Below are positions 15,696 to 29,300 of a stretch of DNA of 64,000 nt, piece after piece; position 1 is the first letter of the stretch, and each line of letters starts with the position of its first letter. Below the pieces are notes generated by a model. The model was not told the origin of the DNA and did not search any database. It was given only the letters and a program-made list of their open reading frames with translations. Origin of the DNA: Laetmonice hystrix (Eukaryota); assembly GCA_965235115.1 (NCBI GenBank), contig OZ249436.1, positions 3,038,001-3,102,000 of the forward strand, in the 5' to 3' direction. The translations under genes and the position numbers were made by a program.

Positions 15696-15818
15696 TTACG
15701 CCTTGCCGTTTGTCACAGATGTAGCTCGCGTACTGTAGTAAGCATCAAAGAAGCCATTGGCGATTTCACTGACGATGGATCGATCAGGGATACTCTGGGC
15801 CATGCCGTAAATGGCAGC
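15696..15818 (-). CDS. SGPL1: SGPL1 coding exon 15 (terminal)
   Basis: [40 protein letters not shown]. Confidence 0.95.
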   Translation of the reverse strand, partial: AAIYGMAQSIPDRSIVSEIANGFFDAYYSTRATSVTNGKA

Positions 15819-18800
15819 CTGTAAGACAACCAAAAGGTTTTAAATAACAAAATATCAGTCAATCAGTTAGAAGAACACCAGTAATTCATAACCTAAATAT
15901 TTTACATTCTTATACAATCTAAAATACCGTGTTTGAACTCGGAAAAATGTGTTTGTGCAGAGAGATTGAGGTTTGTTGGATATAGCCAATCTCTGACATG
16001 ACTAGGAATCTCACCTGGCCTCCAGCCTTTGCTTTAGGATCCTTCATAATTTCAGCAGTAGCCTTACGTACATCCTTGATGAAGCGATCTGCCACACCAG
16101 GTTTGGTATGCAGCAGAGTCACACACAGGTGGATGCTGCCAGGAAAAAATTAAAAATAGTAGATAGTTCACATGGATCAACGGTTCAACAAGTCTTTTAC
16201 TCTTTCCATATCAATTTCTAACTGGAATTGCAAAATGAGTAAAAAGTAGAAAAATAGACAATTCATAGTAATACATGCATTTTTTTTTGTCACGCCAATG
16301 AGACTTCTGGTCAACAAGTGAATAAACTGAACCAGAAATTAAACACACACCCAGACCCCAGCGCAGGTGTGTGACAAAGATCAGAAAATTGTTTCTTACC
16401 TGTACGGGAATTGGAGTGCATTCAGATTCCATCCGACGGCCGTCAGAGCATCAGACAGACGGTAGATGTTGAACTCATCTGAACCAAGACCAATCACGGA
16501 GACCTTGGGGTCTCCGAACACCTTCAGCCCTGGGATCTCCTGCATTCTGCAACACATTGTGGTTCATTTCAATCTCACTACACGTGTGCTGACAGAAAAT
16601 AACAAGTCTAATCTCACTACACTTGTGCTGACAGAAAATACCACGTCTAATCTCACTACACTTGTGCTGACAGAAAATACCAGGTCTAATCTCACTACAC
16701 TTGTGCTGACAGAAAATACCCGGTCTAATCTCACTACACTTGTGCTGACAGAAAATACCACGTCTAATCTCACTACACTTGTGCTGACAGAAAATACCAC
16801 GTCTAATCTCACTACACTTGTGCTAACAGAAAATACCAGGTCTAATCTCACTACACTTGTGCTGACAGAAAATACCAGGTCTAATCTCACTACACTTGTG
16901 CTGACAGAAAATACCAGGTCTAATCTCACTACACTTGTGCTGACAGAAAATACCAGGTCTAATCTCACTACACTTGTGCTGACAGAAAATACCAGGTCTA
17001 ATCTCACTACACTTGTGCTGACAGAAAATACCAGGTCTAATCTCACTACACTTGTGCTGACAGAAAATACCAGGTCTAATCTCACTACACTTGTGCTGAC
17101 AGAAAATACCAGGTCTAATCTCACTACACTTGTGCGGACAGAAAATACCAGGTCCAATCTCACTGCACTTGTGCTGACAGAAAATACCAGGTCTAATCTC
17201 ACTGCACTTGTGCTGACAGAAAATACCAGGTCTAATCTCACTGCACTTGTGCTGACAGAAAATACCAGGTCTAATCTCACTACACTTGTGCTGACAGAAA
17301 ATACCAGGTCTAATCTCACTACACTTGTGCTGACAGAAAATACAGGACAAATGCTTCCCCTGGTACCCTCCTGAATCTAACTTCATTACCAATTATTCCC
17401 AGATCCCACAAACAAATAAAACATATAAAGTACATACGCTGCTGTTATGCTTCGTGTGGTTTTGATGATGCTCCCTGTAGACTTGACATACCCATCCCTT
17501 CCAATACACATCATGGTGGCCCAACACGCAGCAATGATAGCGCCTGCACGACTCCCTGTCACACGCACACACACACACATTATGAGAGACTCAGCTCTAA
17601 TCAAGGAATCTTAACCAACCTAAAGCGGTATTTACAAGCCACAGGATCGGATTCAAATTCAACATTTACCGTATATGTCCCTTTAGCCGCGCACTACCTA
17701 TTTGCCGCGCACCCCCACATTCTTTCAAACAAGCTGTGCCGGAAACCCGTATTCGACACGCCACCTAGTGTAAAATTTTGTAAGCTCCAGGCGCAACCTC
17801 CCTATTGCCGCGCACTGCTTTTCTGCGCACGCACATGCATGGCTAAAGGGACATATACGGTATTAGGTCATTACTTACGTTTCCTTACACATTACTTCAT
17901 TATGATATTACCGATTTCCACAAATAATTTCCATAAAATAGGAAAAATCCTAGAAAATACCTGCGAATGTGGGTGAGGCATAGATGCCGCCAGGCCAGTC
18001 AGGTTGTACAAAGAACTGGTAGCGACGGTAGGCTGGACTACTGTACATTATTACTGAGGATCCCTTGGGTGCAAACCCATACTACAACACAACAGAACAG
18101 GTTTCAAAACCTGAGGATTTATTATTGTTATATACTTTCAACATGGGACTCCTTACAGATGACGTCGTCAATCAAGAGATTAGTCATTACGGTGTAAAAT
18201 TTTGCCATAAGAACAAGGTTCATAATGTAACAAATCATCTTGCTACAGTCTGGACTACCCTTTACCGAGTACGGCCATTTGTAGGACACTAAATTAGAAA
18301 GTGAACTTCAATGTTGAGTCTGGAGGTGTCCTAACCTTGTGTGTGTCAGCAGATATTGACGTTACCCCGGGAAGACTGAAGTCAAAGGGTTCGATAGGGT
18401 AACCAGCCTTCTCCATGAAGGGTACCAAGAAGCCACCGAGACAGCTGTCGACGTGAACGGGTAGGTTGTACTGCTGCCCCAAGGCTGCGATCTCTTCAAT
18501 GGGGTCCATGATTCCGTGGGGGAATCCTGGCGCTGAACCAACCAACTGTAAAATTCAACGTAACAACGTTCACCCACACAGAGACTATCTCAAACACCAG
18601 ACTTGGAACCTGTTTGTTACTTCATAGAACAACATGGGACTGAGACTGTGAAACAATGCAACTTGTATAGAACATCTACGTGTTCACCCACACAGAGACT
18701 ATCTCAAACACCAGACTTGGGACCTGTTTGTTACCTCATAGAACAACATGGGACTGAGACTGTGAAACAATGCAAGTATAGAACATCTACGTGTTCACTC

Positions 18801-21800
18801 ACACAGAGACTATCTCACACACCAGACTTGGAACCTGTTTGTTACCTCATAGAACCACATGGGACTGAGACTGTGAAACAATGCAACTTGTATAGAACAT
18901 CTACGTGTTTACCCACACAGAGACTATCTCAAACACCAGGGACCTACCATACAGGTATTTTTGTTGATGGCACGCCTCATAGCCCTCACGTCAACTCTCC
19001 TCGTCTTCTCATCGACACGTATATGAACTATCTTCATTTTGAAGAACTGTGCTGCCTAAAAAAAATAGAGAAAATGTTTCCTCTTCATAAGTCGTTTTAG
19101 CTCCCTTCTTTCAGAGTTCAGTACTATCAGAAAAAACATTCATGAACGAGGTTTTTTTATTATTACTAGGGAGTTAAATACTCCTGATTATTTTCACTTG
19201 TTTCATTTTGTCAGATCAAGGTAAAATAACAAGAGCGCAATCCTCAAATCCACATACCTTATCAAATGCTGCATGAACGGTGATAGGGACAACCCTGGGA
19301 TGTGAGTAAAATAACATGTTAGGGCATCAGTAATTAACACATCCTGGGACAGGGAGTGATGAAAACTCTATCAGTGAGGGATAATCTGATATCTGGTAAT
19401 TATTACTTACTCCATGAAACATTTCAGGGAAACAATTCAAACTTTCCATGCACTAGAAAATATATTTTATGGTGCTTACATTTCAGCAAATTTAACTCCA
19501 CGTTCCTCATATGCTTTGTCTCTGTATGCTTTACAAGCCAGCATGATACTCTCTGTACCTCCTGATGTCATCTACAACAACAGTCAAAACTTTATAACAG
19601 TTGGCACTGCCACCAAGTTAGTGAGAATATCAGATTAAGAAAGCACATACTTGTAATAGATGTTCCATGTTAAAATCAATGTTCTTTATAACAGTTGGCA
19701 CTGCCACCAAGTTAGTGAGAATATCAGATTAAGAAAGCACATACTTGTAATAGATGTTCCATGTTAAAATCAATGTTCTGCCTACTCACACTAACAGATG
19801 TTCCATGTTAAAATCAATGTTCTGCCTACTCACACTAACAGATGTTCCATGTTAAAATCAATGTTCTGCCTACTCACACTAACAGATGTTCCATGTTAAA
19901 ATCAATGTTCTGCCTACTCACACTAACATATGTTCCATGTTAAAATCAATGTTCTGCCTACTCACACTAACAGATGTTCCATGTTAAAATCAATGTTCTG
20001 CCTACTCACACTAACAGATGTTCCATGTTAAAATCAATGTTCTGCCTACTCACACTAACAGATGTTCCATGTTAAAATCAATGTTCTGCCTACTCAACCT
20101 AACAGATGTTCCATGTTAAAATCAATGTTCTGCCTACTCACACTGCCACAGGAGTCCGATGATCCACGAAACATGTGACATGTCATGCGCACCACCTCAG
20201 CCTCCATCTTCCTGATGTCGGGGAAGACATCTGGGTGAAGAGGATTGGTCCATGCAAACTCCCCATACACCTGAACACAGCACCATCATGAAGATCATTA
20301 CTACAGTGAAACATTTACTGAGGTAGCTAATCCCAGGCCCAACCAAACTCGTTCAGGGTGGTTCACTACGTACCCACACTTACAAACACCCTGGCTATAC
20401 CAAAAATACTCATAATTACAGCATCTTTCCACTAACACTTACAGGCACTTCAAGAGGAGCGAGCATACTTTAAATGTTACATAGCACCATCAATAACATG
20501 ATATTATTTATCCATTTTATCAGCTAGTAATACCAGAGCACTTTCCCATATTGTTTCCAGACTATACCCAGTACAGGCAAGTGTTGTATTATCTTAACCC
20601 TGTACTGCTCACAATCTATGTCTGAGCTGACTTTATACACACCTTGGACATCAGCTGAGACAATCTGTCTTCCCCACTGTAAACTGTCCCTGAACACTGC
20701 CCTTTCTCCCAGCTTACGCCAGCTGAAATAACAACCATTATTTACATTAACAAATATTACGGGCAGTTTAATAGTTGCTTTCTTATACAGAGAATATTAC
20801 ATCACAGTCTGTTTTATAGAAATCAAGCCAAGCTACCAGTATTTATGTTTCTTAAATTTACATATTACTTCAATCTATCTTCACACAGAGAATACAAAGA
20901 CCTTTAATAAATCATTTCAACGGTTAGTTTCCTTAATTAACATATAGAAAATGGAATATACCTGTTATAGTACTTACCTAATGCCTTATATTTCTTTACT
21001 TCTTCTAAAACTCTATCCTATAATTAGACAGAATTTAATGAATTAATAGACACAAATATACAGTTTTTGACATTTTCTTTGAAAGTACATGTATGAGAAT
21101 GATCTGGTCATTCTTAAATGTCCTTAATAACCATCCGAAACGTTGACCAGACAATATAAAAGACGTATTCCTCCTGTAACCTACTTTTTTATCTTGCCAA
21201 AGTTGTCAAGTTGTCTACCATTGCCCAGGTGTCCTTACCTCACCAAGTCCCTCCTCTGGTAGTACACTGATATATCCTTGACCTTGATTGCCCTTAGTAA
21301 AGCTTTCCTCAATGCCCTGAACGGCAGCTCCAAGTTCTTTCTCAATGCGAGCCCGAATAAAAGGTATGCTTTTCACACAGCCAAAGAACCATTTTAGAAA
21401 CCTCTTTTTCAGGCCTGTTGAAACAACAAAGGATATGATAAAATATACAGTAAATAGAAGGTTATTCATGAAAGCAAATATTCAAGACTGTGCCTGACTC
21501 TGGTAAACTGAAAGACTGTTTAAAACACAATTTTCAGAACACTCCTCAAAAAGTATTAAAAGCTGTCTTCCAAATTTATCTGCTTACTGCTTATGACAAA
21601 TTACAGATCTATACCATATTTTTTCCACAACACACAGTAGATCCAAACGGAAGCAGCTGTCTTCTGCTTCCCCTACTCACTCTCTTCTTGGAAGAGAAAG
21701 TCCAGTAGCCACACAGCTAATAAGGTGAAGCTGAACGTGTATGCGATAACCTGCCATGGCTCTAATCCTGTACACGAATTATTCACAAACACTCGTGCCA

Positions 21801-23728
21801 CCTCAGCATATGGATGGACCGTAGCCTGTAACATTCAGATACAATAATACATTCAGGGCTTGAAATAACTGCATTCGCATCGCAATTTGTGAGTGAAAAT
21901 CAGCCTGTTGCGAATCAAATTAACATATGAGTCGCAAAATATTGCCTATTACTGCTTCTACAAACCAGATAACTCAGTAATTATTGCGAATCAAAATTTT
22001 TAAAGTATTTCGCGACCTGAACATTACATGACAATGATCACTAGCAAACACATGCACGATGAGGGAATGTCTTTCAAACAATCAACCATTTTATTAAAAG
22101 AAACTAAGGAGAAGATTGACCATTCCCATTCACAATCTGTATTTTCTGCCGTAGTTGTTGCCATAATTTTATTTTCTCGCAGACATACACCCTCCTTGAG
22201 AGAATGTAAACAAACAATGGCATTGTCAGTGACTAACAAAAGTAAAGAAGTCATAACAATTGTGCAAATCAAGCTACATTATATAGATCATTGGGAGGCC
22301 TTGAAGAAACATGGGATTAAATACTCTGCCACCTTGTGAAAATGTTGAACCAACCCAAGTTACTGAATCTGTGTTTTGACCTTCTAACCACATAGCTACA
22401 CACCAATCCTTGGTCAAGGTGGTACTTGACCTGCAGGCTACTTGTCCTATCAGTACTGCACTGTCTTCTACCATCTAGAAGATATCGGACAACACTGCAC
22501 TGACCTACAACTTCAAGTACTACTACTACTGCACAACACAACGGGTTCAGATATGCTCTGACAACATTTACTTCGCAGAGACAGGGTCTTGTCCACCAAA
22601 ATGTTCTAAATTCTGCAGCACTTGCATCCTTTTCAATTGGTCACAAAAGATGCCAATTGTCTTGCATGGTTTGCAGTGAATCTTGGTGTTATCCATGCTA
22701 AATTCCCACACAAGTCTAATTCATTAGCCTTGTCAAACCATTGGCCAATATAATGGACTGTGGCTGAGCAATTTGGCAGGAGGCTCCAATTTCTAAAAAA
22801 CATACCATGTTCAGGGGGGTGTGCCTATTCTTTATATATTTTTTAAGGTGTGTGTGTGGGGGGGGGGGGAGAGAGGGTGTTTTTGACAGTTTCCTTTAGA
22901 ATATTAGAATTAGAATATTAGAATTAGAATATTAGACTTGTGTACCATATAAAATGTTATAAAATTATACAAGTTTCTGTCTGCTTCTGCTGTGTTAAAA
23001 TTTTTTCAAAGATTAACAAGTACTTCAATAATTCATTTAGTGACTAGACTCTACGATTACATATAATTTGAATATCTATTCTACTTTTTTTCTAGTTTAC
23101 AGAGCCTGACTTAAAGTTAAATTTAAAAGACTAAATGCCACCTCCATCACTAGGACGTATGGCAGGCAACAGGCATGATGATACGTGCTTGTCTGTCCTA
23201 CTGGTCGAGCAACACAACAAGGGCTTGACATCTCTTTGTTCCTGAAGCCCTGGACCTGGCTTACAGAATTATTCACTGTTGTTATGTAATACTCTATTGT
23301 GTACGCGATCGTAAATTGCAAATGCAATATTGCCAATACCACTGGCATTCTAACGTTACTAAGTGACCAGTGTAACCCTCTACAAACTCTCCTGACATTG
23401 CCATTCTGAAATTCGATCATTGTCGTCGATATCGTACTGTAGTCGAGCAGCAAGGTCTCTTTGACAACAGCAACTTGACGCTCAAGTCAAGTGGTAGCCA
23501 GTCCACAGCTGTGGCCTGTGTACTCAGTGTGTCACGGACACAACGCCGCGGCGCTGGCAGTCTTTACTTCCAACTCTGAGTTCGTCCTTCATCCCACAAA
23601 ACCAGTACATTCTTATCTTTGACAGAGACCTAACAGTCCAATTGACGCGTAAAATCTCACTCTTTTCCAACTTTCACAGATATAATGAAGTACTCGCTTA
23701 CCACTATGTTTTTGATGAAGTCGGCCAT
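15696..23728 (-). CDS. SGPL1: Sphingosine-1-phosphate lyase (PLP-dependent, group II decarboxylase fold); 15 coding exons, 557 aa
   Basis: Hand-assembled exons, all GT-AG and phase-consistent, total 1674 nt including stop: 23702-23728, 21681-21825, 21239-21414, 20978-21017, 20643-20722, 20142-20270, 19480-19571, 19258-19294, 18948-19055, 18336-18545, 17961-18081, 17438-17555, 16400-16546, 16015-16135, 15696-15818. Family motifs include EPWQ plus an N-terminal TM segment, [53 protein letters not shown] (PLP lysine), GGIYASPT and AAIYGMAQ. Confidence 0.97.
16015..16135 (-). CDS. SGPL1: SGPL1 coding exon 14
   Basis: [40 protein letters not shown]. Confidence 0.95.
16400..16546 (-). CDS. SGPL1: SGPL1 coding exon 13
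   Basis: [48 protein letters not shown]. Confidence 0.95.
16571..17343. repeat. 39-bp tandem array x~20 in SGPL1 intron 12
   Basis: AATCTCACTACACTTGTGCTGACAGAAAATACCAGGTCT; explains ORFs 16466..17374, 16564..17319 and 16823..17392. Confidence 0.97.
17438..17555 (-). CDS. SGPL1: SGPL1 coding exon 12
   Basis: [38 protein letters not shown]. Confidence 0.95.
17669..17860. mobile_element. 192-bp Tc1/mariner-type MITE in SGPL1 intron 11
   Basis: Perfect 20-bp TIR CCGTATATGTCCCTTTAGCC / GGCTAAAGGGACATATACGG, with TA on both sides (17667-68, 17861-62). Confidence 0.9.
17961..18081 (-). CDS. SGPL1: SGPL1 coding exon 11
   Basis: [40 protein letters not shown]. Confidence 0.96.
18336..18545 (-). 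CDS. SGPL1: SGPL1 coding exon 10 (ends on the PLP lysine)
   Basis: [70 protein letters not shown]. Confidence 0.97.
18568..18939. repeat. 111-114-bp tandem array x~3.3 in SGPL1 intron 9
   Basis: GTT(C/T)AC(C/T)CACACAGAGACTATCTCA recurs at 18568, 18682, 18793, 18907. Confidence 0.93.
18948..19055 (-). CDS. SGPL1: SGPL1 coding exon 9
   Basis: [36 protein letters not shown]. Confidence 0.96.
19258..19294 (-). CDS. SGPL1: SGPL1 coding exon 8
   Basis: [12 protein letters not shown]. Confidence 0.93.
19480..19571 (-). CDS. SGPL1: SGPL1 coding exon 7
   Basis: [30 protein letters not shown]. Confidence 0.96.
19590..20141. repeat. ~95-bp duplication grading into a 44-bp tandem array x~9 in SGPL1 intron 6
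   Basis: CACTAACAGATGTTCCATGTTAAAATCAATGTTCTGCCTACTCA; the last unit contains the true exon 6 donor. Confidence 0.96.
20142..20270 (-). CDS. SGPL1: SGPL1 coding exon 6
   Basis: [43 protein letters not shown]. Confidence 0.97.
20643..20722 (-). CDS. SGPL1: SGPL1 coding exon 5
   Basis: [26 protein letters not shown]. Confidence 0.94.
20978..21017 (-). CDS. SGPL1: SGPL1 coding exon 4
   Basis: [13 protein letters not shown]; 40 nt, bridges phase 0 to phase 1. Confidence 0.88.
21239..21414 (-). CDS. SGPL1: SGPL1 coding exon 3
   Basis: [58 protein letters not shown]. Confidence 0.94.
21681..21825 (-). CDS. SGPL1: SGPL1 coding exon 2 (TM anchor)
   Basis: [48 protein letters not shown]. Confidence 0.94.
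23702..23728 (-). CDS. SGPL1: SGPL1 coding exon 1
   Basis: ATG GCC GAC TTC ATC AAA AAC ATA GTG (MADFIKNIV) followed by GTAAGC; phase 0, matching exon 2. Confidence 0.8.
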
Positions 23729-23779
23729 GCTGAATAGTCACATGATCAAGGCTTCGCGGAATAGTCATGTGGCTTGACC

Positions 23780-24142
23780 CATACTCGCCAGGTGGCGCCT
23801 AAATAATGTGTGGTAGCATGGTAGTCATCATTTAGACGACTTGTCTTAGTTAGAGCTGACTAGTTTACAAACTGGATCGCGAGTGTGGTGGCTTGAGTAG
23901 CCTCAAACGTTCCAGTCGTCCCTTTGAGGCTTTATGGAGCATGCAGTGAAGAAAAGGTTGAAAATATGCCAGGAATCATCGCTAGGTGCCGCACTCGTGC
24001 GAGACGTTATCACACGTTATCCTGTATACGACAGCGACATCTACTGAGAGAAGTAGGATGTACTGTCCCGTGCTTCACCCCGCGCTCCCTCGGATTTCTC
24101 TCAAGGTTTTGAGAAAATAACTGGCGCCACCTGGTGAGTATG
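23780..24142. promoter_or_regulatory. 363-bp segment bounded by a 20-bp inverted repeat; probable shared promoter region of SGPL1 and the + strand gene (or a MITE)
   Basis: CATACTCGCCAGGTGGCGCC (23780-23799) vs CATACTCACCAGGTGGCGCC on - (24123-24142), 19/20 identical; CpG-containing interior. Confidence 0.55.
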
Positions 24143-24423
24143 CACGTACTCATGTTTTTTGTACGATCGACCGCCATTTAGGCTATAGGCCTAACTATTA
24201 TTTGCTTCAGGCCCCTGGTATTACGCTCTATGGCAGCGTTCTGGGTGGGCAGCGTTCTGGGTGGGCAGGTTAGGGGATCACAGTAGCCACACTGTGGCTA
24301 CCAGGGCAGGGGTGAGGCTGTAGGCCTGCTAGAAACCACGCAAAACAGGAATAGCATTTGCAAGTAATGTAGGGCTAAGGCATAGTATAGGCTAATAGTA
24401 GGAAAATAGCACATACAATAGGC

Positions 24424-24710
24424 CTATCATTCACTGACTTGTCCAGGCGTTGCTTAGATCTCTGTATCCTGATGACTGCTTGACAGCACTGTATGTCAAA
24501 CACTGTGCGCAGTGTGCTTTGGAAAATCCAATAAATAATTAAAAAATATTATGGCATGATACATAGGCCTACAGTTTGTTGATAGAAGACTTTTTGTAAT
24601 TCCACCAGAGTTCAGCTGTGTAGGCTTACATAGGGGTGCAATAGAAACGAAACAAGGTTAATTTAACATCAATATTACACATGTGGAATTTCCGCAATAT
24701 AAAGAGGCCT
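24424..24710 (-). mobile_element. Decayed non-LTR retrotransposon ORF2 C-terminal fragment
   Basis: Minus strand reads ILRKFHMCNIDVKLTLFRFYCTPM*AYTAELWWNYKKSSINKL*AYVSCHNIF*LFIGFSK and, after a frameshift, VFDIQCCQAVIR...RLDKSVND. This resembles a recalled post-RT C-terminal region of LINE ORF2; clade not assigned. Confidence 0.7.
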
Positions 24711-24717
24711 ATAGGGG

Positions 24718-24912
24718 CTTCAAAATGAAGATAGTTCATATACGTGTCGATGAGAAGACGAGGAGAGTTGACGTGAGGGCTATGAGGCGTGCCATCAACA
24801 AAAATACCTGTATGGTAGGTCCCTGGTGTTTGAGATAGTCTCTGTGTGGGTAAACACGTAGATGTTCTATACAAGTTGCATTGTTTCACAGTCTCAGTCC
24901 CATGTTGTTCTA
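24718..24912 (+). pseudogene. Inverted 195-bp copy of SGPL1 exon 9 (97 nt) plus adjacent intron 9 (98 nt)
   Basis: Reverse complement of 18850-19044; by eye only one mismatch (ATGTTGTTCTA vs ATGTGGTTCTA); retains the GTAGGT donor at 24815. Confidence 0.95.
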
Positions 24913-25253
24913 CTGCCTATTATGGCAGTGTGGGGAGGACGCCTTTTAGAAGTGTGTATGATGTATAAGTTTTTTTACGCACTGATCTTCCGTACTTGAG
25001 ATTTAGAATTAACTTTTATAGACAAATAACGCAGAAATACAAAGATATGAGATGAAAATATACGACCTCTAAAGGCGCCCTCTATCGTGGAGTTGCCACC
25101 TAGCGGCACAGTGCTGACACACAGTCGGCTGGCACCTGGCAATGGACTGACAGGAGGCCATTTGTACGAAGGATAGAGAGATATAATAAGGAACTCGCTA
25201 GTAGAATCATAAGACGAAGGAAGAAAGGGTCGGGTCGGTGGCGATATTCACAG

Positions 25254-25284
<31 letters not shown>

Positions 25285-26195
25285 TGTCAAAGACCAAATC
25301 ATAGGTCCCAAGTTCCAAGATTTGAAATGCTGGTCATGCGAACGCCGAGGGCGCGAAGCCTGGAGTGGGGGGGGGGGGGGGGGCTGTGGGCGCTCCCCCG
25401 GCAGAACAATTTGAAAAATAAAGTGCCAAATACGCGTTTTCCTGGCATCTGGGAACAAAATCTAGGCCCTCTGACGGTCTGAGCTGGGGGCAAAACTATC
25501 TAGGCCTAGGCCTGCCCCCCATGGAGCTTTTGAGCTGGGGGGCAACGTGCCCCCCTGCCCCCCCCCCCCCGGTTCCGGCGCCTATGATATTTTGTCTGTC
25601 GCCACTTGTGGCGATGTGGCGACCATTTGCCCATCACTGTTAATGGTCAGTTAGCATCTGCCAGTGAGTGTGGTGAGGTCAGCGATCCTGTAGGTGTAGC
25701 GCGTACATCGTTGGTGTGGTGGTACCCTGACTGGTCCCCGGCTCAACTCCTATCGGAGATAGAGACCGGTACACAGCAGCACGTTAGCCCATTTCATTGG
25801 CCGAAGAGCGACTTGCTCTCATTGGCGCACACCGATGCCAAATTGTTTTTTCTACGTCTACTGATTGTGACGCGATAATATCACCATGGTTCCTAAGTCT
25901 ACTGATTGTGACGTGACAATATCACCATGGTCGTACGGCCTGTTGCTAAGTGATCTGTCGTTCCGGTTGTCTTTTTTTTGACGTCAGAATGTAAATTCGG
26001 GCCTAAATTAGCCCGTTTTTGCTGGTGTGTACCTGTCTGTATCTCCGACCGCGGGAGGAAAACAGCAGGGGACCAGTCAGGGTGGTACCCGGCTGGGTGC
26101 GCCCCCTGGTGCAGCCGCGGGAAGTCACGAGCATGCGTGTTACGCTTGAACTACTGTGGCGCCACCAAGCTGCTGTGGGAGCTTGTGAAAACAAT

Positions 26196-26339
26196 ATGGA
26201 GGACGATGTGAAGGAAATAACGTTACAAAGGAGTGATTCATTGGGGTTTGGGTTCTCAATTATTGGCGGATCTGGATCAGAATTACCACCAGTTATCTGT
26301 GACATTGTGGAGGATTCACCAGCTGATCATTGTGACGAG
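26196..26339 (+). CDS. N-terminal half of a PDZ domain; probable first coding exon of a PDZ-domain protein
   Basis: MEDDVKEITLQRSDSLGFGFSIIGGSGSELPPVICDIVEDSPADHCDE contains the GLGF-type loop (LGFGFSIIGG) and the I..I...SPA signature; donor GTAGGT at 26340. The start codon is inferred, since the ORF is open from 26019. Confidence 0.8.
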
Positions 26340-29300
26340 GTAGGTACATCGTTAGCATCGTTAGAAATCCACGATCCATGCTTGTGTTTGGCGGCGAGTC
26401 TGCCTGGGCGTGATGATGCTCGGGTCTCGGCATGTCGAGCAAGACGTGGAGGCTGAGTGAGACTGGCCTGGATTGAGTCAACATCACTGTCATTCGGTCC
26501 ACGAATCTCACATGGGCCCAGTCGGGTGGAGTTAGCTATCCTACCATTATCGTATTGTTTATTGTAACCAAATATCTTGCTGTCCTGTTTTGTGTTGGGC
26601 GTTGAGATGTCAACGCTGGGCCGGGGTTGATACCACCGACGGCCGTCGTGGTGAGATCAGCGGGGACCGAGGTCGGTGCTGACCGTCGTCATGTGGCCGG
26701 GCGGCGGCGGGGAGCGGCAGGACGGGAGGGTGGGAGGCGGGGAGCCGCCGAGATCGATAGAGCTGTCCCGAGTAGCCAGGACAATGACTGAAGCTGTGCG
26801 AGGAATCGGTCTGGAACAAACCCAGCCCATCATCGCGCCCTCCGTCCCTGGGGCAGGGGTGGCATGGTTGGCTTTGTGCTGCCCTCCACGCCTCCCCCAC
26901 ATCTCAGTGACATCTGCCAGGATTAGGGGGCCTACATATGTCATTCACTCATTGGTTTTGTAAAAGGTGGCCATATGGTCGAAAGGCCATGGTATCCAAA
27001 ACAAAATAAACCACATCATTTCAGCACAACCCTGGTGTCTGACTGGAAATACTGCTGTACTGATATTGCTGACTGTGATTGTTGGTTAGCAATATCCAGC
27101 AATTCCAGCAGGCAAATGCAAACAAGTTCTTGCAAATTGAGGTAGACCCCTCTGGCTATGTCCACCCCGTTTAGTTGAGGTAGACAGGCCTGCTGAAGAC
27201 TGAATTTACTAATGGCAATACCATAATAATTTCTGTCAGTTATAGGGTCTAGGCGAGTTCTGACGGTATAATGAGGAGCATGGCCTAAGGCTAGGTGAAA
27301 GGGCTAAAGCAGCCGGCAGGACAGGTGGCTGGGGTTGCGCGTAAATATAGGACACTGGTCAGTCTCTCTGCTGACAGTAGCCCAAATTTATTGTGATGGG
27401 GAGGGGATATTGGTGTCATAGGTTAGCATTTATTTAGCTAGTGTTATCGGCATATTGTTAACAACATGCTGTAGAGACAAGTCACAAATTAATAGTAATT
27501 TTTAATTATCCTGTTGGTTTAAAAGGGCACCTGTTTGTCAAAAGGGGCATCTTTTACAGAATAACTAGGGGAAAAACGACCCGTCCCCGGGTACTCCTGC
27601 AAGGAGAAATTTCCCCTTCCCCAAGTCTGTTATGATTGCATAAAGTTGTTCTACTGGCTGCTCAGGTTATAATCTAACATGATTTGATCTAAAGGTCATC
27701 ACCCATATATCGTTGCTGTTCTCTATGTAACATTAAAAGTGCCATCGTCACATTCCTTGTATTGCCATAATTATGATGACTGATGAGTTCATTAAGAAGG
27801 AAACGTTGCTATATCACCTGGCAACCCACATTGGGGTTGCCGCTGCCCCAAACAATTATTTGAGGAATCCCTCCATGGTGTAACCAACCAGGTTGAACAT
27901 GGAGAGAAATAGACAATGTTCTCTAGGGTGACACTGACAGAACATCATCAGAATCCCTGATTACGGCCGTGAGAACCCCATAGCAAGGACGGTTGGGTCT
28001 AACATGAGCAGTTAATGATACACTCTGGCTCTGCACCCTTTAGCTTTATGGTTTTGCACTTGAAGTTGAACAAGCAGTCAGTCACAGTGTTTGGACAGTA
28101 TGCTGTAGGCCAGGGGAAAAAACAAGACTTGAACTTTTTTTTGGCAACTAGGATGGTTCCAGTGGTCTTGTACCAACTTACAAACATGTTGACCCATTCC
28201 ACACTATTGCTTGTCGTGTAAATTTCCTTGCATCACGTTTCTGTCATTATCAGCTGGAGAACCTTTTCTAATATGGATCAGGAAGACATGAGATTGCAAG
28301 ATTTTTTCAATCTTCTCATTTCTTGGAAGCCTTTCCCTGCAGACCTGTAATAAAGCACTTTCAAATGTTTGTTTATACCAGCGTATGGAAAGAAGTTGTG
28401 GGAATCTGGGGTACATTTAGAAAATATCTGGACATATTTAACATGCATCTGATAAGTTATCATGGGTGATATATTTTTAGTTTGGCTGCAGTCTTGACCC
28501 TTAATATAATTTGGGACTCCTGTTTGCTCATGTTTTACCCATGGCATGTATGTTTTTAATAATTATCGATCCATACAAATGTAAATTCTGTCTCAGTGTC
28601 CACTTGTATCAGGTGTAATCCAAGCACCCTGATGTAATGAGAGACTTTCCTGTTTGTGATGTAATTAGAGAGTCCTGTGATGTTATGAGAGAATACACAT
28701 GGATGTAATTAGAGTACCCTAATATAACCTGTACTCAGAGGTTTTGTAGATCAGATAATCTATTGGATGTTTGCTAACTAGAAGTAACTTACTATTGTAG
28801 TACACACAGCCCTCTTTCAGGCTCTTTGGGTTACTAAGTGCAATAATGCTGGTTTCCATAAATTTGGTTAGAAACCTTTCATTCTGTTGTGTTTTTAATT
28901 AACGAGTTTTAGAGTAGTCAGTAAAAGTCTAAATCTGGCAGAATTCCAGTGATTCTTAAAACACAGCCCATTTCTTAAAAAACAAAGAGGTACAGCCACA
29001 AAAACACAGCCCTGTACAGTCTCAGCCACTGTATATCTGTGGGCCTCAAATTTCGCATCAGGCCTGCGTCTGATTGGTTCATTGATGTGAAGTCATAATA
29101 TTTGCCACTGTCACCAGGAAGTTTGGAGCTGGTGCAACAAACTGATAACAAAAAGGGCAAGCTGACCACACTTTGCTAACTGCAGAAATCTTGAGGCTAT
29201 AAACGACAGAAGTTGACACATGTTGGTGTAATGTGATTTATGATGGAGGTGTACTAATTGAAAAGTCCGGGAGATCGGTGTGATATCTGTGGAGTCCACT

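What the first reader, a model, noticed from the sequence alone, without database searches (positions are those of the whole stretch)
18850..24912. Inverted near-perfect copy of SGPL1 exon 9 plus intron, joined to a LINE stub ~1 kb upstream of the gene
Sequence: 24718-24912 is the reverse complement of 18850-19044 (195 bp, one mismatch by eye). It includes intron sequence, so it was not copied from spliced mRNA. Its left end lies within 8 bp of the 5'-truncated end of a minus-strand LINE ORF2 fragment (24424-24710), with AGGCCTATAG at the junction. The LINE piece is decayed while the SGPL1 piece is almost pristine. On + the copy keeps its donor (GTAGGT, 24815), gains an AG at 24713-14, and holds an ATG-initiated 30-codon frame ([11 protein letters not shown]...NTCM). 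Known: LINE template switching, twin priming and templated insertions at breaks can capture local sequence. Inference: (a) a potential 100-nt cassette exon for the divergent + transcript; (b) inverted repeats 5.7 kb apart bracketing SGPL1 exons 1-8 and the promoter, so recombination between them would invert that block; (c) the age mismatch favours a recent templated repair event or ongoing gene conversion over LINE co-insertion.
Basis: partly seen in the sequence, partly recalled or inferred. Interest (0 to 1): 0.75.

Follow-up and report, generated by a model that had tools for sequence, protein, structure and literature searches.

The report
Inverted SGPL1 exon copy: repair patch
A 195-base piece of the SGPL1 gene (most of one exon plus the start of the next intron) was recently copied backwards into a repeat about 1 kb upstream of the gene, most likely as a patch laid down during repair of a DNA break, and nothing shows that it has a function.

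Summary
24718-24912 is the reverse complement of 18850-19044 (195 nt, 1 mismatch). It is the only inverted repeat of 70 nt or more in the window, and the genome has only these two copies.

The source is a 108-nt SGPL1 exon (19055-18948, minus strand). The copy lacks its first 11 nt and keeps the donor plus 98 nt of intron.

Twelve bases of a high-copy repeat ("Y", 24701-12) and AGGGG lie between. After the copy come CT and the rest of Y, with GCCTAT on both sides.

So a 202-nt patch was inserted into an older Y copy, independently of the LINE and recently.

Read-derived contigs from one sample bridge the left junction at single-copy depth, and the shared arm has about 1.6x depth. An assembly artefact is therefore unlikely. 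RNA contigs match only the true spliced exon.

The same spot in other Y copies carries TA-GGCC-TA scars, which are very common in this genome (also noted by the scan elsewhere). The break may therefore have come from transposon excision.

Verdict: an ordinary, cleanly documented templated insertion. The cassette-exon and inversion ideas are untested or unsupported.

The parts
18850..19044 (-). Source arm: nt 12-108 of an SGPL1 coding exon (19044-18948) plus the first 98 nt of the downstream intron (18947-18850).
   Evidence: The exon peptide aligns to human SGPL1 (4q6r), E 6.6e-5.
18948..19055 (-). The complete source exon: 108 nt, 36 codons ([10 protein letters not shown]...NKNTCM), acceptor AG at 19057-56, donor GT at 18947-46.
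   Evidence: Sequence. An RNA contig of run X4 aligns to the copy only up to 24814, which is the donor boundary.
18568..18939 (.). A tandem repeat of about 112 bp (3.3 units) in the intron. The copy's intron half is one partial unit. The other units carry the copy's base at the single mismatch position.
24718..24912 (+). Inverted copy, SGPL1 sense on the + strand: exon part 24718-24814, intron part 24815-24912. One mismatch, at 24906.
   Evidence: The shared-arm contig has depth 67.5 against about 40 for flanking single-copy contigs in run X1.
24713..24717 (.). Left junction filler AGGGG. It matches neither Y nor the donor.
24913..24914 (.). Right junction filler CT.
24707..24712 (+). Left copy of the duplicated target GCCTAT.
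   Evidence: Uninterrupted Y copies read AAAGAG GCCTAT TATG.
24915..24920 (+). Right copy of the duplicated target GCCTAT.
24701..24712 (+). Twelve nt of repeat Y (AAAGAGGCCTAT) to the left of the patch.
   Evidence: Identical to the 12 nt that precede the breakpoint in other Y copies. There are 78 exact genomic matches to the uninterrupted 22-mer.
24915..25240 (+). The rest of the Y repeat fragment, 86-93% identical to many genomic copies, with one 36-nt deletion after 25210.
24405..24700 (-). A 5'-truncated, decayed non-LTR retrotransposon piece: the ORF2 C-terminal tail and 3' UTR. It carries three 6-nt AGGCCT/AGGCTT insertions.
   Evidence: 83% identical to C6 and C4 paralogues. The paralogue ORF has RVT_1, E 2e-28. 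The tail is 85% identical over 27 aa, E 3e-14.
15699..23600 (-). SGPL1 gene body. Coding exons seen near 21825, 21481, 20741, 20285, 19571, 19326, 19055, 18554, 18081, 17610, 16563, 16149 and 15839. The 5' end is not located; a CpG-rich stretch lies at 23400-24200.

Best explanation
This is a real and recent templated insertion, a repair patch.

The target was a copy of the high-copy repeat Y, lying 12 nt from the 5' end of an old LINE fragment in the repeat-rich spacer upstream of SGPL1. It suffered a break in its TA-rich motif GCCTAT/TATG. The break was closed by copying 195 nt from the SGPL1 exon-intron boundary 5.7 kb away, in inverted orientation. The patch was joined with a few extra bases (AGGGG on the left, CT on the right), and GCCTAT ended up on both sides. 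The donor stayed intact.

My preferred sub-mechanism is DNA-templated, synthesis-dependent end joining or a replication template switch to nearby DNA (about 0.5). The break itself could be a staggered cut or the excision of a TA-targeting cut-and-paste element (about 0.35-0.4 for excision).

Shown: the anatomy, the insertion into Y, the independence from the LINE, the young age, and the presence in reads.

Inferred: the kind of break, the kind of template, and the absence of function. The patch most likely does nothing. It is a neutral scar that also creates a 195-bp inverted repeat around the 5' part of SGPL1.
For: - The arms are 195 nt with 1 mismatch, have sharp ends, and are unique in the genome.
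- In 11 of 11 inspected Y copies, and in 78 exact genomic matches, the sequence runs straight through AAAGAGGCCTAT-TATG. In the window the 202-nt block splits it, with GCCTAT on both sides.
- The Y fragment is 86-93% identical to its family and the LINE 83% to its nearest paralogues. The patch is 99.5% identical to its donor, so the patch is younger than both.
- There is no poly(A), no inverted terminal repeats, and the intron is retained.
- A nearby donor in cis and an inverted orientation are the hallmarks of template switching (PMC5453318, PMC7954356). Short untemplated bases at junctions are typical of DSB patch repair (PMC5110952, PMC2943611).
- Reads: 164-nt contigs in runs X1 and X3 cover 24584-24747 without a difference, at depths 38 and 28, near the single-copy level. 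The shared arm has depth 67.5.
- Break origin: 7 of 85 Y copies with exact anchors have small insertions at this same motif, including TA-GGCC-TA, TA-GGCGCC-TA and TA-CATG-TA. TAGGCCTA occurs 57 times in 131.6 kb, against 1-6 for control flanks.
Against: - All four runs come from one sample, possibly the one that was assembled.
- The left-junction contigs reach only 30 nt into the copy, which is one short of the tool's own bridging rule, though it is what a k=31 graph gives at a repeat.
- No listed contig piece covers the right junction.
- There is no microhomology at either junction, which a pure microhomology-driven template switch would predict.
- A 6-bp duplication is not a classic feature of NHEJ patches (class 2 TSIPs lack it), and 195 nt over 5.7 kb is larger than typical short-range template switches.
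- The patch lies only 17 nt from the LINE end. I treat this as chance.
- DNA and RNA templates cannot be told apart from the sequence.
- Absence of function rests on one small RNA data set kept as contigs.
Confidence: 0.8

Rival explanations
1. RNA-templated insertion. A fragment of unspliced SGPL1 pre-mRNA was reverse-transcribed, either by a LINE enzyme acting in trans at a nick (as in a class 1 TSIP) or as a cDNA patch at a break (class 2).
For: - On the + strand the copy is in pre-mRNA sense and contains exon plus intron.
- A target duplication of 5 bp or more is the class 1 hallmark, and extra bases at junctions occur in both classes (PMC5110952).
- The genome holds LINE copies with long open RT frames.
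- The gene is expressed.
Against: - There is no poly(A) or other tail, and the implied nick site (AGGC/CTCT) is not a TTTT/A-type site.
- Both ends of the fragment are internal to the pre-mRNA.
- Reported TSIP donors are scattered over the genome (PMC5110952), whereas here the donor is 5.7 kb away in cis. That fits a DNA template, or would need a nascent-RNA special case.
Confidence: 0.2
2. Co-insertion with the LINE. During the LINE's integration the reverse transcriptase jumped template (or twin priming occurred) and captured local sequence. The high identity is kept by gene conversion from the exon.
For: The copy lies only 17 nt from the LINE's 5'-truncated end. Extra sequence at LINE 5' junctions is a known phenomenon (own knowledge).
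Against: - Twelve nt of Y and 5 nt of filler separate the two.
- The patch is bracketed by a duplication of Y sequence, not of the LINE's target.
- The LINE has three 6-nt insertions and broken frames and is 83% identical to its paralogues, while the patch has 1 difference in 195, including 98 nt of unconstrained intron.
- On the LINE's strand the captured piece would be antisense SGPL1.
- There is no decayed homology beyond the sharp arm ends, which an old converted duplicate would be expected to show.
Confidence: 0.04
3. Assembly artefact: a chimeric or misjoined read placed exon sequence upstream of the gene.
For: The runs found come from a single sample and are not independent of the assembly. 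The right junction is not among the listed contig pieces.
Against: - The left-junction words are present at full single-copy depth in two runs.
- The arm has about 1.6x depth.
- The insertion is biologically coherent: a precise split of a known repeat with a 6-bp duplication.
Confidence: 0.03
4. A functional element: a new cassette exon or small ORF for a + strand transcript, an antisense or hairpin RNA partner of the exon, or a substrate for a regulated or recurrent inversion of the SGPL1 5' block.
For: - A native donor at 24815, an AG at 24713-14 and a 30-codon ATG frame are present.
- The two arms bracket the 5' exons and the CpG-rich putative promoter.
- Inverted repeats can drive inversions and RNA pairing (own knowledge).
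Against: - The only RNA contig on the copy is the true spliced exon. No RNA contigs lie on the copy's flanks, and the + gene's first contig starts 1.3 kb downstream.
- The acceptor context is purine-rich.
- The copy is too young for conservation to say anything.
- An inversion would separate exons 1-8 from the catalytic exons, giving a null allele.
Confidence: 0.05

Closest known systems
Templated sequence insertions / TSIPs (Onozawa et al.; review PMC5110952)
   Same: A short stretch copied from elsewhere in the genome is inserted while the donor stays intact. It may contain intron sequence, has untemplated bases at the junctions, and has no known function.
   Different: This case mixes the two classes. 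It has a 6-bp target duplication (class 1) but no poly(A) and no TTTT/A site (class 2-like). The donor is local (5.7 kb, in cis) and inverted, whereas TSIP donors are scattered. An RNA origin is not shown here.
Replication template switching (short-range template-switch mutations, PMC5453318 and PMC7954356; FoSTeS/MMBIR at larger scale, own knowledge)
   Same: An inverted copy of nearby sequence is written into the nascent strand, and returning slightly behind the leaving point can duplicate a few bases.
   Different: The length (195 nt) and distance (5.7 kb) exceed typical short-range events. No microhomology is seen at the switch points, and filler bases are present.
Filler DNA at transposon excision sites and synthesis-dependent MMEJ (PMC2943611; the plant and Drosophila excision literature is own knowledge)
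   Same: The target duplication is retained on both sides, a few bases that could be element-end remnants (G-run on the left, CC on the right) are present, and a templated filler lies between. The same motif in other Y copies carries TA-GGCC-TA scars.
   Different: The responsible element is not identified. The left junction has an extra TA compared with the canonical scar. Fillers are usually much shorter than 195 nt.
LINE 5'-junction chimeras and twin priming
   Same: The patch lies next to the 5'-truncated end of a LINE, and the orientation is inverted relative to the donor.
   Different: The patch does not abut the LINE, the ages differ greatly, and it has its own target duplication within another repeat.
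Inverted-repeat-mediated gene inversions (for example F8 intron 22; own knowledge)
   Same: Inverted repeats, one inside the gene and one upstream, bracket the 5' part of the gene.
   Different: The arms are only 195 bp, against kilobases in the known cases. No inverted allele has been observed.

Membership tests
Templated insertion (donor-copy patch) | The insert has a unique donor elsewhere that remains intact. | tested here: met
   There are only two full copies in 627 Mb, and the donor exon is in frame and expressed.
Templated insertion (donor-copy patch) | An empty-site equivalent shows precise interruption of the target. | tested here: met
   Paralogous Y copies read straight through the site: 11 of 11 loci and 78 exact 22-mers. 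The orthologous empty allele was not seen.
Class 2 TSIP (NHEJ patch) | No target duplication; microdeletion, microhomology or untemplated bases at the junctions. | tested here: not met
   Untemplated AGGGG and CT are present, but GCCTAT is duplicated.
Class 1 TSIP / LINE-mediated retro-insertion | Target duplication of 5 bp or more. | tested here: met
   A 6-bp GCCTAT lies on both sides.
Class 1 TSIP / LINE-mediated retro-insertion | A poly(A) tail after a polyadenylation signal, and a TTTT/A-type target. | tested here: not met
   The insert ends GTTGTTCTA-CT. The implied nick is AGGC/CTCT.
LINE 5' chimera / twin priming with the neighbouring LINE | The captured sequence abuts the LINE, has the same age, and shares its target duplication. 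| tested here: not met
   There is a 17-nt gap, of which 12 nt are Y. Identity is 83% for the LINE against 99.5% for the patch. The duplication is of Y sequence around the patch only.
Replication template switch (FoSTeS/MMBIR-like) | The donor is nearby in cis and inverted. | tested here: met
   5673 nt separate the arms, which are in opposite orientation.
Replication template switch (FoSTeS/MMBIR-like) | Microhomology at the switch points. | tested here: not met
   There is 0-1 nt of shared sequence at either junction, and filler bases lie between.
Transposon-excision scar with filler DNA | The site is a target of the element, and scar letters flank the filler. | tested here: inconclusive
   Other Y copies carry TA-GGCC-TA, TA-GGCGCC-TA and TA-CATG-TA at this motif. 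The window reads TA-TA-GGGG...CC-TA, which is close to the canonical scar but not identical. No element was found.
SGPL1 (sphingosine-1-phosphate lyase), the donor gene | Sequence homology to solved SGPL1 and to the PLP-dependent decarboxylase fold. | tested here: met
   4q6r E 6.6e-5 on the 36-aa exon. PF00282 on the next exon at 26.8 bits, just under the cut-off of 27 for this single-exon fragment. Other exons were recognised by eye.
Non-LTR retrotransposon (LINE), stretch 24405-24700 | Homology to an element that encodes a reverse transcriptase. | tested here: met
   No Pfam hit on the window's own frames. Paralogue L007 has RVT_1, E 2e-28, and its ORF tail matches the window at E 3e-14. 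The clade was not determined.
Alternative (cassette) exon | Spliced reads that use its acceptor and donor. | tested here: inconclusive
   One small RNA run, kept as contigs, shows only the true exon's mRNA.

The most novel reading that the evidence does not exclude
The patch sits inside a split TA-G(n)...C(m)-TA scar. It would then be a caught-in-the-act example showing that the very abundant TAGGCCTA motifs of this genome come from two break ends that each carry TA plus G's. Such ends would be left by an unidentified, highly active TA-targeting element or break process, and they can capture long templated filler from nearby genes, scattering gene fragments and creating inverted repeats around promoters.
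Probability: 0.25. Interest if true: 0.55.

Novelty: new member of a known kind. Interest (0 to 1): 0.3.

Why it matters
This is a clean natural example of a templated insertion whose full anatomy can be read: donor, target, duplication and filler. The target's uninterrupted state is known from dozens of paralogous repeat copies.

It shows how a fragment of an essential gene can be placed, inverted, next to that gene's own promoter. That creates raw material for inversions, for gene conversion into the exon, or for RNA pairing, although none of these is shown here.

It also links to a genome-wide peculiarity, the TAGGCCTA scars at TA sites, and may help explain the break process behind them.

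For annotation, the copy should be flagged as a gene fragment. Short reads from the true exon will mis-map to it.

Tried and rejected
- Pfam on the window's own minus-strand frames of 24378-24916 gave no reverse transcriptase or endonuclease hit. I first concluded the LINE call was wrong, then reversed this when paralogue L007 showed an RT ORF running through the homologous part.
- My first reading of 'a common end at 24700 in all copies' was an artefact, because the window's own truncation sets the alignment ends.
- A tRNA/SINE-head scan of 23000-26500 found nothing.
- I first took the CCAAT boxes at about 25800 as a bidirectional promoter, which would have put the copy in SGPL1 intron 1. They lie inside a 363-bp insertion that is absent from another allele in the reads, so I dropped the idea. 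The SGPL1 start remains unlocated: the RNA contigs are patchy and do not cover several sure exons either.
- A look-up of the ORF spanning the right junction in public assemblies found nothing on record.
- A search for a TA-flanked element with GG...CC termini and inverted ends in 131 kb found nothing convincing.
- A literature search for TAGGCCTA found only incidental primer or sequence hits.
- Scan notes for other inverted exon copies returned none.
- Gene conversion as the reason for the high identity was rejected as unnecessary, because the insert is simply younger than its target.
- The filler letters (TATAGGGGC, TCTACTGC) have no informative second source in the window.
Full report
**Observation**

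The window holds a 195-nt inverted repeat. 24718-24912 is the reverse complement of 18850-19044 with one mismatch (18856 C against the copy's base at 24906), and identity stops abruptly at both ends. It is the only inverted repeat of 70 nt or more in the 64 kb window. A search of the whole 627 Mb assembly finds only these two full copies. The intron half also matches the neighbouring units of a local tandem repeat of about 112 bp at 18568-18939. Those other units carry the copy's base at the mismatch position, so the single difference probably arose in the source, or the donor allele had that base.

**The donor**

SGPL1 lies on the minus strand, with coding exons from about 21825 down to about 15700. 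The exon concerned is 19055-18948: 108 nt, 36 codons, acceptor AG at 19057-56 and donor GT at 18947-46. Its peptide aligns to human SGPL1 structure 4q6r residues 191-226 (E 6.6e-5), and the next exon hits the PLP-decarboxylase family PF00282. The copy starts 11 nt inside the exon, runs through the donor site and ends 98 nt into the intron. It was therefore not made from spliced mRNA. An RNA-like run (X4) has a 277-nt contig that matches the copy only over 24718-24814. That is the true spliced exon of the mRNA, and it confirms the donor boundary. I could not verify the exon number. The first coding exon and the transcription start were not located: a CpG-rich stretch lies at 23400-24200, the exon at 21825 begins after a good acceptor, and the RNA contigs are too patchy to help.

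**The flanks**

To the right, 24915-25240 belongs to a high-copy repeat that I call Y. It gave 1538 first-look candidates, and the scored copies are 86-93% identical. Y also occurs in tandem arrays with a period of about 1.05 kb on contig C21. Other Y copies extend beyond both ends of the window's fragment.

In those copies the sequence at the breakpoint reads AAAGAG-GCCTAT-TATG without interruption. This holds in 11 of 11 loci inspected, and the uninterrupted 22-mer has 78 exact genomic matches. In the window the order is:
- AAAGAGGCCTAT (24701-12)
- AGGGG (24713-17)
- the 195-nt copy (24718-24912)
- CT (24913-14)
- GCCTAT-TATGG and onward (from 24915)

So a 202-nt block was inserted into a pre-existing Y copy, and GCCTAT now stands on both sides.

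To the left, 24405-24700 is 83% identical to two other loci. Its own frames give no Pfam hit. In paralogue L007, however, a 376-aa open frame with a reverse-transcriptase domain (RVT_1, E 2e-28) runs through the homologous part, and its tail matches the window's minus-strand frame at 85% over 27 residues (E 3e-14). Its homology ends at 24700, and 12 nt of Y plus 5 nt of filler separate it from the SGPL1 piece.

**Age and independence**

The LINE fragment has broken frames and three 6-nt insertions relative to its paralogues. The Y fragment differs by 7% or more from its family. The patch differs from its donor at 1 of 195 positions, half of them unconstrained intron. The patch is thus much younger than its surroundings and has its own target duplication. 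LINE co-insertion is rejected, and gene conversion is not needed to explain the identity. There is no decayed homology outside the arms, which an old converted duplicate would be expected to show.

**Is it an assembly artefact?**

Four public runs hold the region. All come from one sample, possibly the assembled one, and all are kept as contigs. I laid them on 20401-26400, with these results:
- Runs X1 and X3 each have a 164-nt contig covering 24584-24747 without a difference. Depths are 38 and 28, close to the neighbouring single-copy contigs (about 33-52).
- These contigs reach 30 nt into the copy. That is what a k=31 graph yields at a repeat boundary, but it is one short of the tool's own bridging criterion.
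- The shared arm contig (24718-24837) has depth 67.5 in X1, about 1.6 times the single-copy level, as expected for two copies.
- The right junction is not among the pieces listed, because the flank is a high-copy repeat and only the longest pieces are shown.
- No joint that skips the patch is among the joints listed, but the list is truncated, so zygosity is open.

Together with the precise split of a known repeat, an artefact is unlikely (about 3%).

**Mechanism**

The firm part is that this is a templated patch inserted at a break in Y. The insertion has:
- no poly(A)
- no terminal inverted repeats
- no microhomology at either junction
- short extra bases at both junctions
- a 6-bp duplication of the target

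Compared with templated sequence insertion polymorphisms (PMC5110952), it mixes class 1 features (the duplication) with class 2 features (no tail, no TTTT/A site, untemplated bases).

The donor lies only 5.7 kb away in cis and is copied in inverted orientation. That is the signature of template switching to nearby DNA (PMC5453318, PMC7954356) or of synthesis-dependent end joining (PMC2943611), whereas RNA-derived patches have donors scattered over the genome. I therefore prefer a DNA template (about 0.5) over reverse transcription of nascent pre-mRNA (about 0.2). The sequence alone cannot decide between them.

**Origin of the break**

This genome is full of TAGGCCTA, also noted by other first-stage readers (s1-349243, s1-344665, s1-349264). 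In 131.6 kb of window plus fetched loci it occurs 57 times, against 1-6 for the same core with other flanks. The LINE fragment here has three AGGCCT/AGGCTT insertions at TA relative to its paralogues.

Among Y copies with exact anchors, 7 of 85 carry small insertions at this very motif. These include TA-GGCC-TA, TA-GGCGCC-TA and TA-CATG-TA, so TA-associated breaks recur at this spot. The window's junctions read TA-TA-GGGG...patch...CC-TA, which is close to a split scar with the patch as filler, apart from one extra TA.

A rough likelihood comparison does not separate this reading from a plain 6-bp staggered break with random filler. I give the excision origin about 0.35-0.4. I could not find the responsible element.

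**Function**

Nothing supports a function.
- The AG at 24713-14 follows a purine-rich stretch.
- No RNA contig lies on the copy's flanks.
- The neighbouring + strand gene's first RNA contig starts at 26203, downstream of the copy.

The arms do bracket the 5' exons and the probable promoter. Recombination between them would invert that block and cut the gene off from its catalytic exons. This is possible in principle with 195 bp of identity, but it was neither observed nor testable with the stretch laid. If some transcript ran through both arms it would fold into a 195-bp duplex. That, too, is only inference.

**Verdict**

It is improved by the finding that the patch is inserted in another repeat with a target duplication. 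The event is an ordinary member of a known class of mutations, well documented here. It has a possible and more interesting link to the genome-wide TA-GGCC-TA scars.

Noticed in passing
window 24420-24425, 24565-24570, 24622-24627; also 1386, 4433, 7894, 24186, 25501: The LINE fragment has three 6-nt insertions (AGGCCT, AGGCCT, AGGCTT), each at a TA, that its paralogues L007 and L008 lack. TAGGCCTA occurs 7 times in the window (0.9 expected). In 131.6 kb of window plus loci it occurs 57 times, against 1-6 for the same core with other flanks. This fits scars of a TA-targeting process, but the element is unidentified.
   Followed up: partly
L030-L036 (for example G000:C1:44753947-44753974, C3:40989806-40989835, C4:5694922-5694949): Among Y-repeat copies with exact anchors, 7 of 85 have 6-18-nt insertions in the motif CCTATTATG. 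They include TA-GGCC-TA, TA-GGCGCC-TA and TA-CATG-TA, so two scar types occur at one site.
   Followed up: partly
window 25718-26080: A 363-bp MITE-like insertion with perfect 12-bp terminal inverted repeats (TGACTGGTCCCC) and a 10-bp target duplication (GGTGGTACCC). DNA contigs of runs X1-X3 also contain the form without it (joint 25717 to 26081), so it is polymorphic or heterozygous in the sample and probably recently mobile.
   Followed up: partly
G000:C21:1458122-1476776: Repeat Y, dispersed with more than 1500 candidate copies, also forms tandem arrays with a spacing of about 1,050 bp. Full units begin with a long palindrome (GGAAACCCGACATTTCAGAATTCCGC...GCGGAATTCAGAAATGTCGGGTTTCC). Its class is unknown.
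   Followed up: no
L007:637-1767 (G000:C6:23277917-23281199): A LINE copy with a 376-aa open frame covering the reverse-transcriptase domain and the C-terminal tail. The family may have been active recently.
   Followed up: no
window 18568-18939: A tandem repeat of about 112 bp (3.3 units, up to 97% alike) lies directly after the donor of the duplicated SGPL1 exon. Its units occur nowhere else in the genome.
   Followed up: partly
window 20640-24462: Contigs of runs X1, X2 and X3, all labelled as one sample, differ from each other and from the assembly at about 20 substitutions and several indels over 4 kb. One example is an 11-nt insertion after 20640 in X2 and X3. Heterozygosity is high, or more than one individual was sequenced.
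   Followed up: no
window 25262-25285, 25368-25383, 25550-25571, 22846-22877: Long G or C runs, some preceded by (GT)n, are frequent in the spacer. GGGGGGGG is the most common 8-mer of the window (68 occurrences).
   Followed up: no
window 26198-26340: The divergent + strand neighbour begins with a PDZ-like first exon (MEDDVKEITLQRSDSLGFGFSIIGG...), supported by an RNA contig at 26203-26339. The gene was not identified.
   Followed up: no
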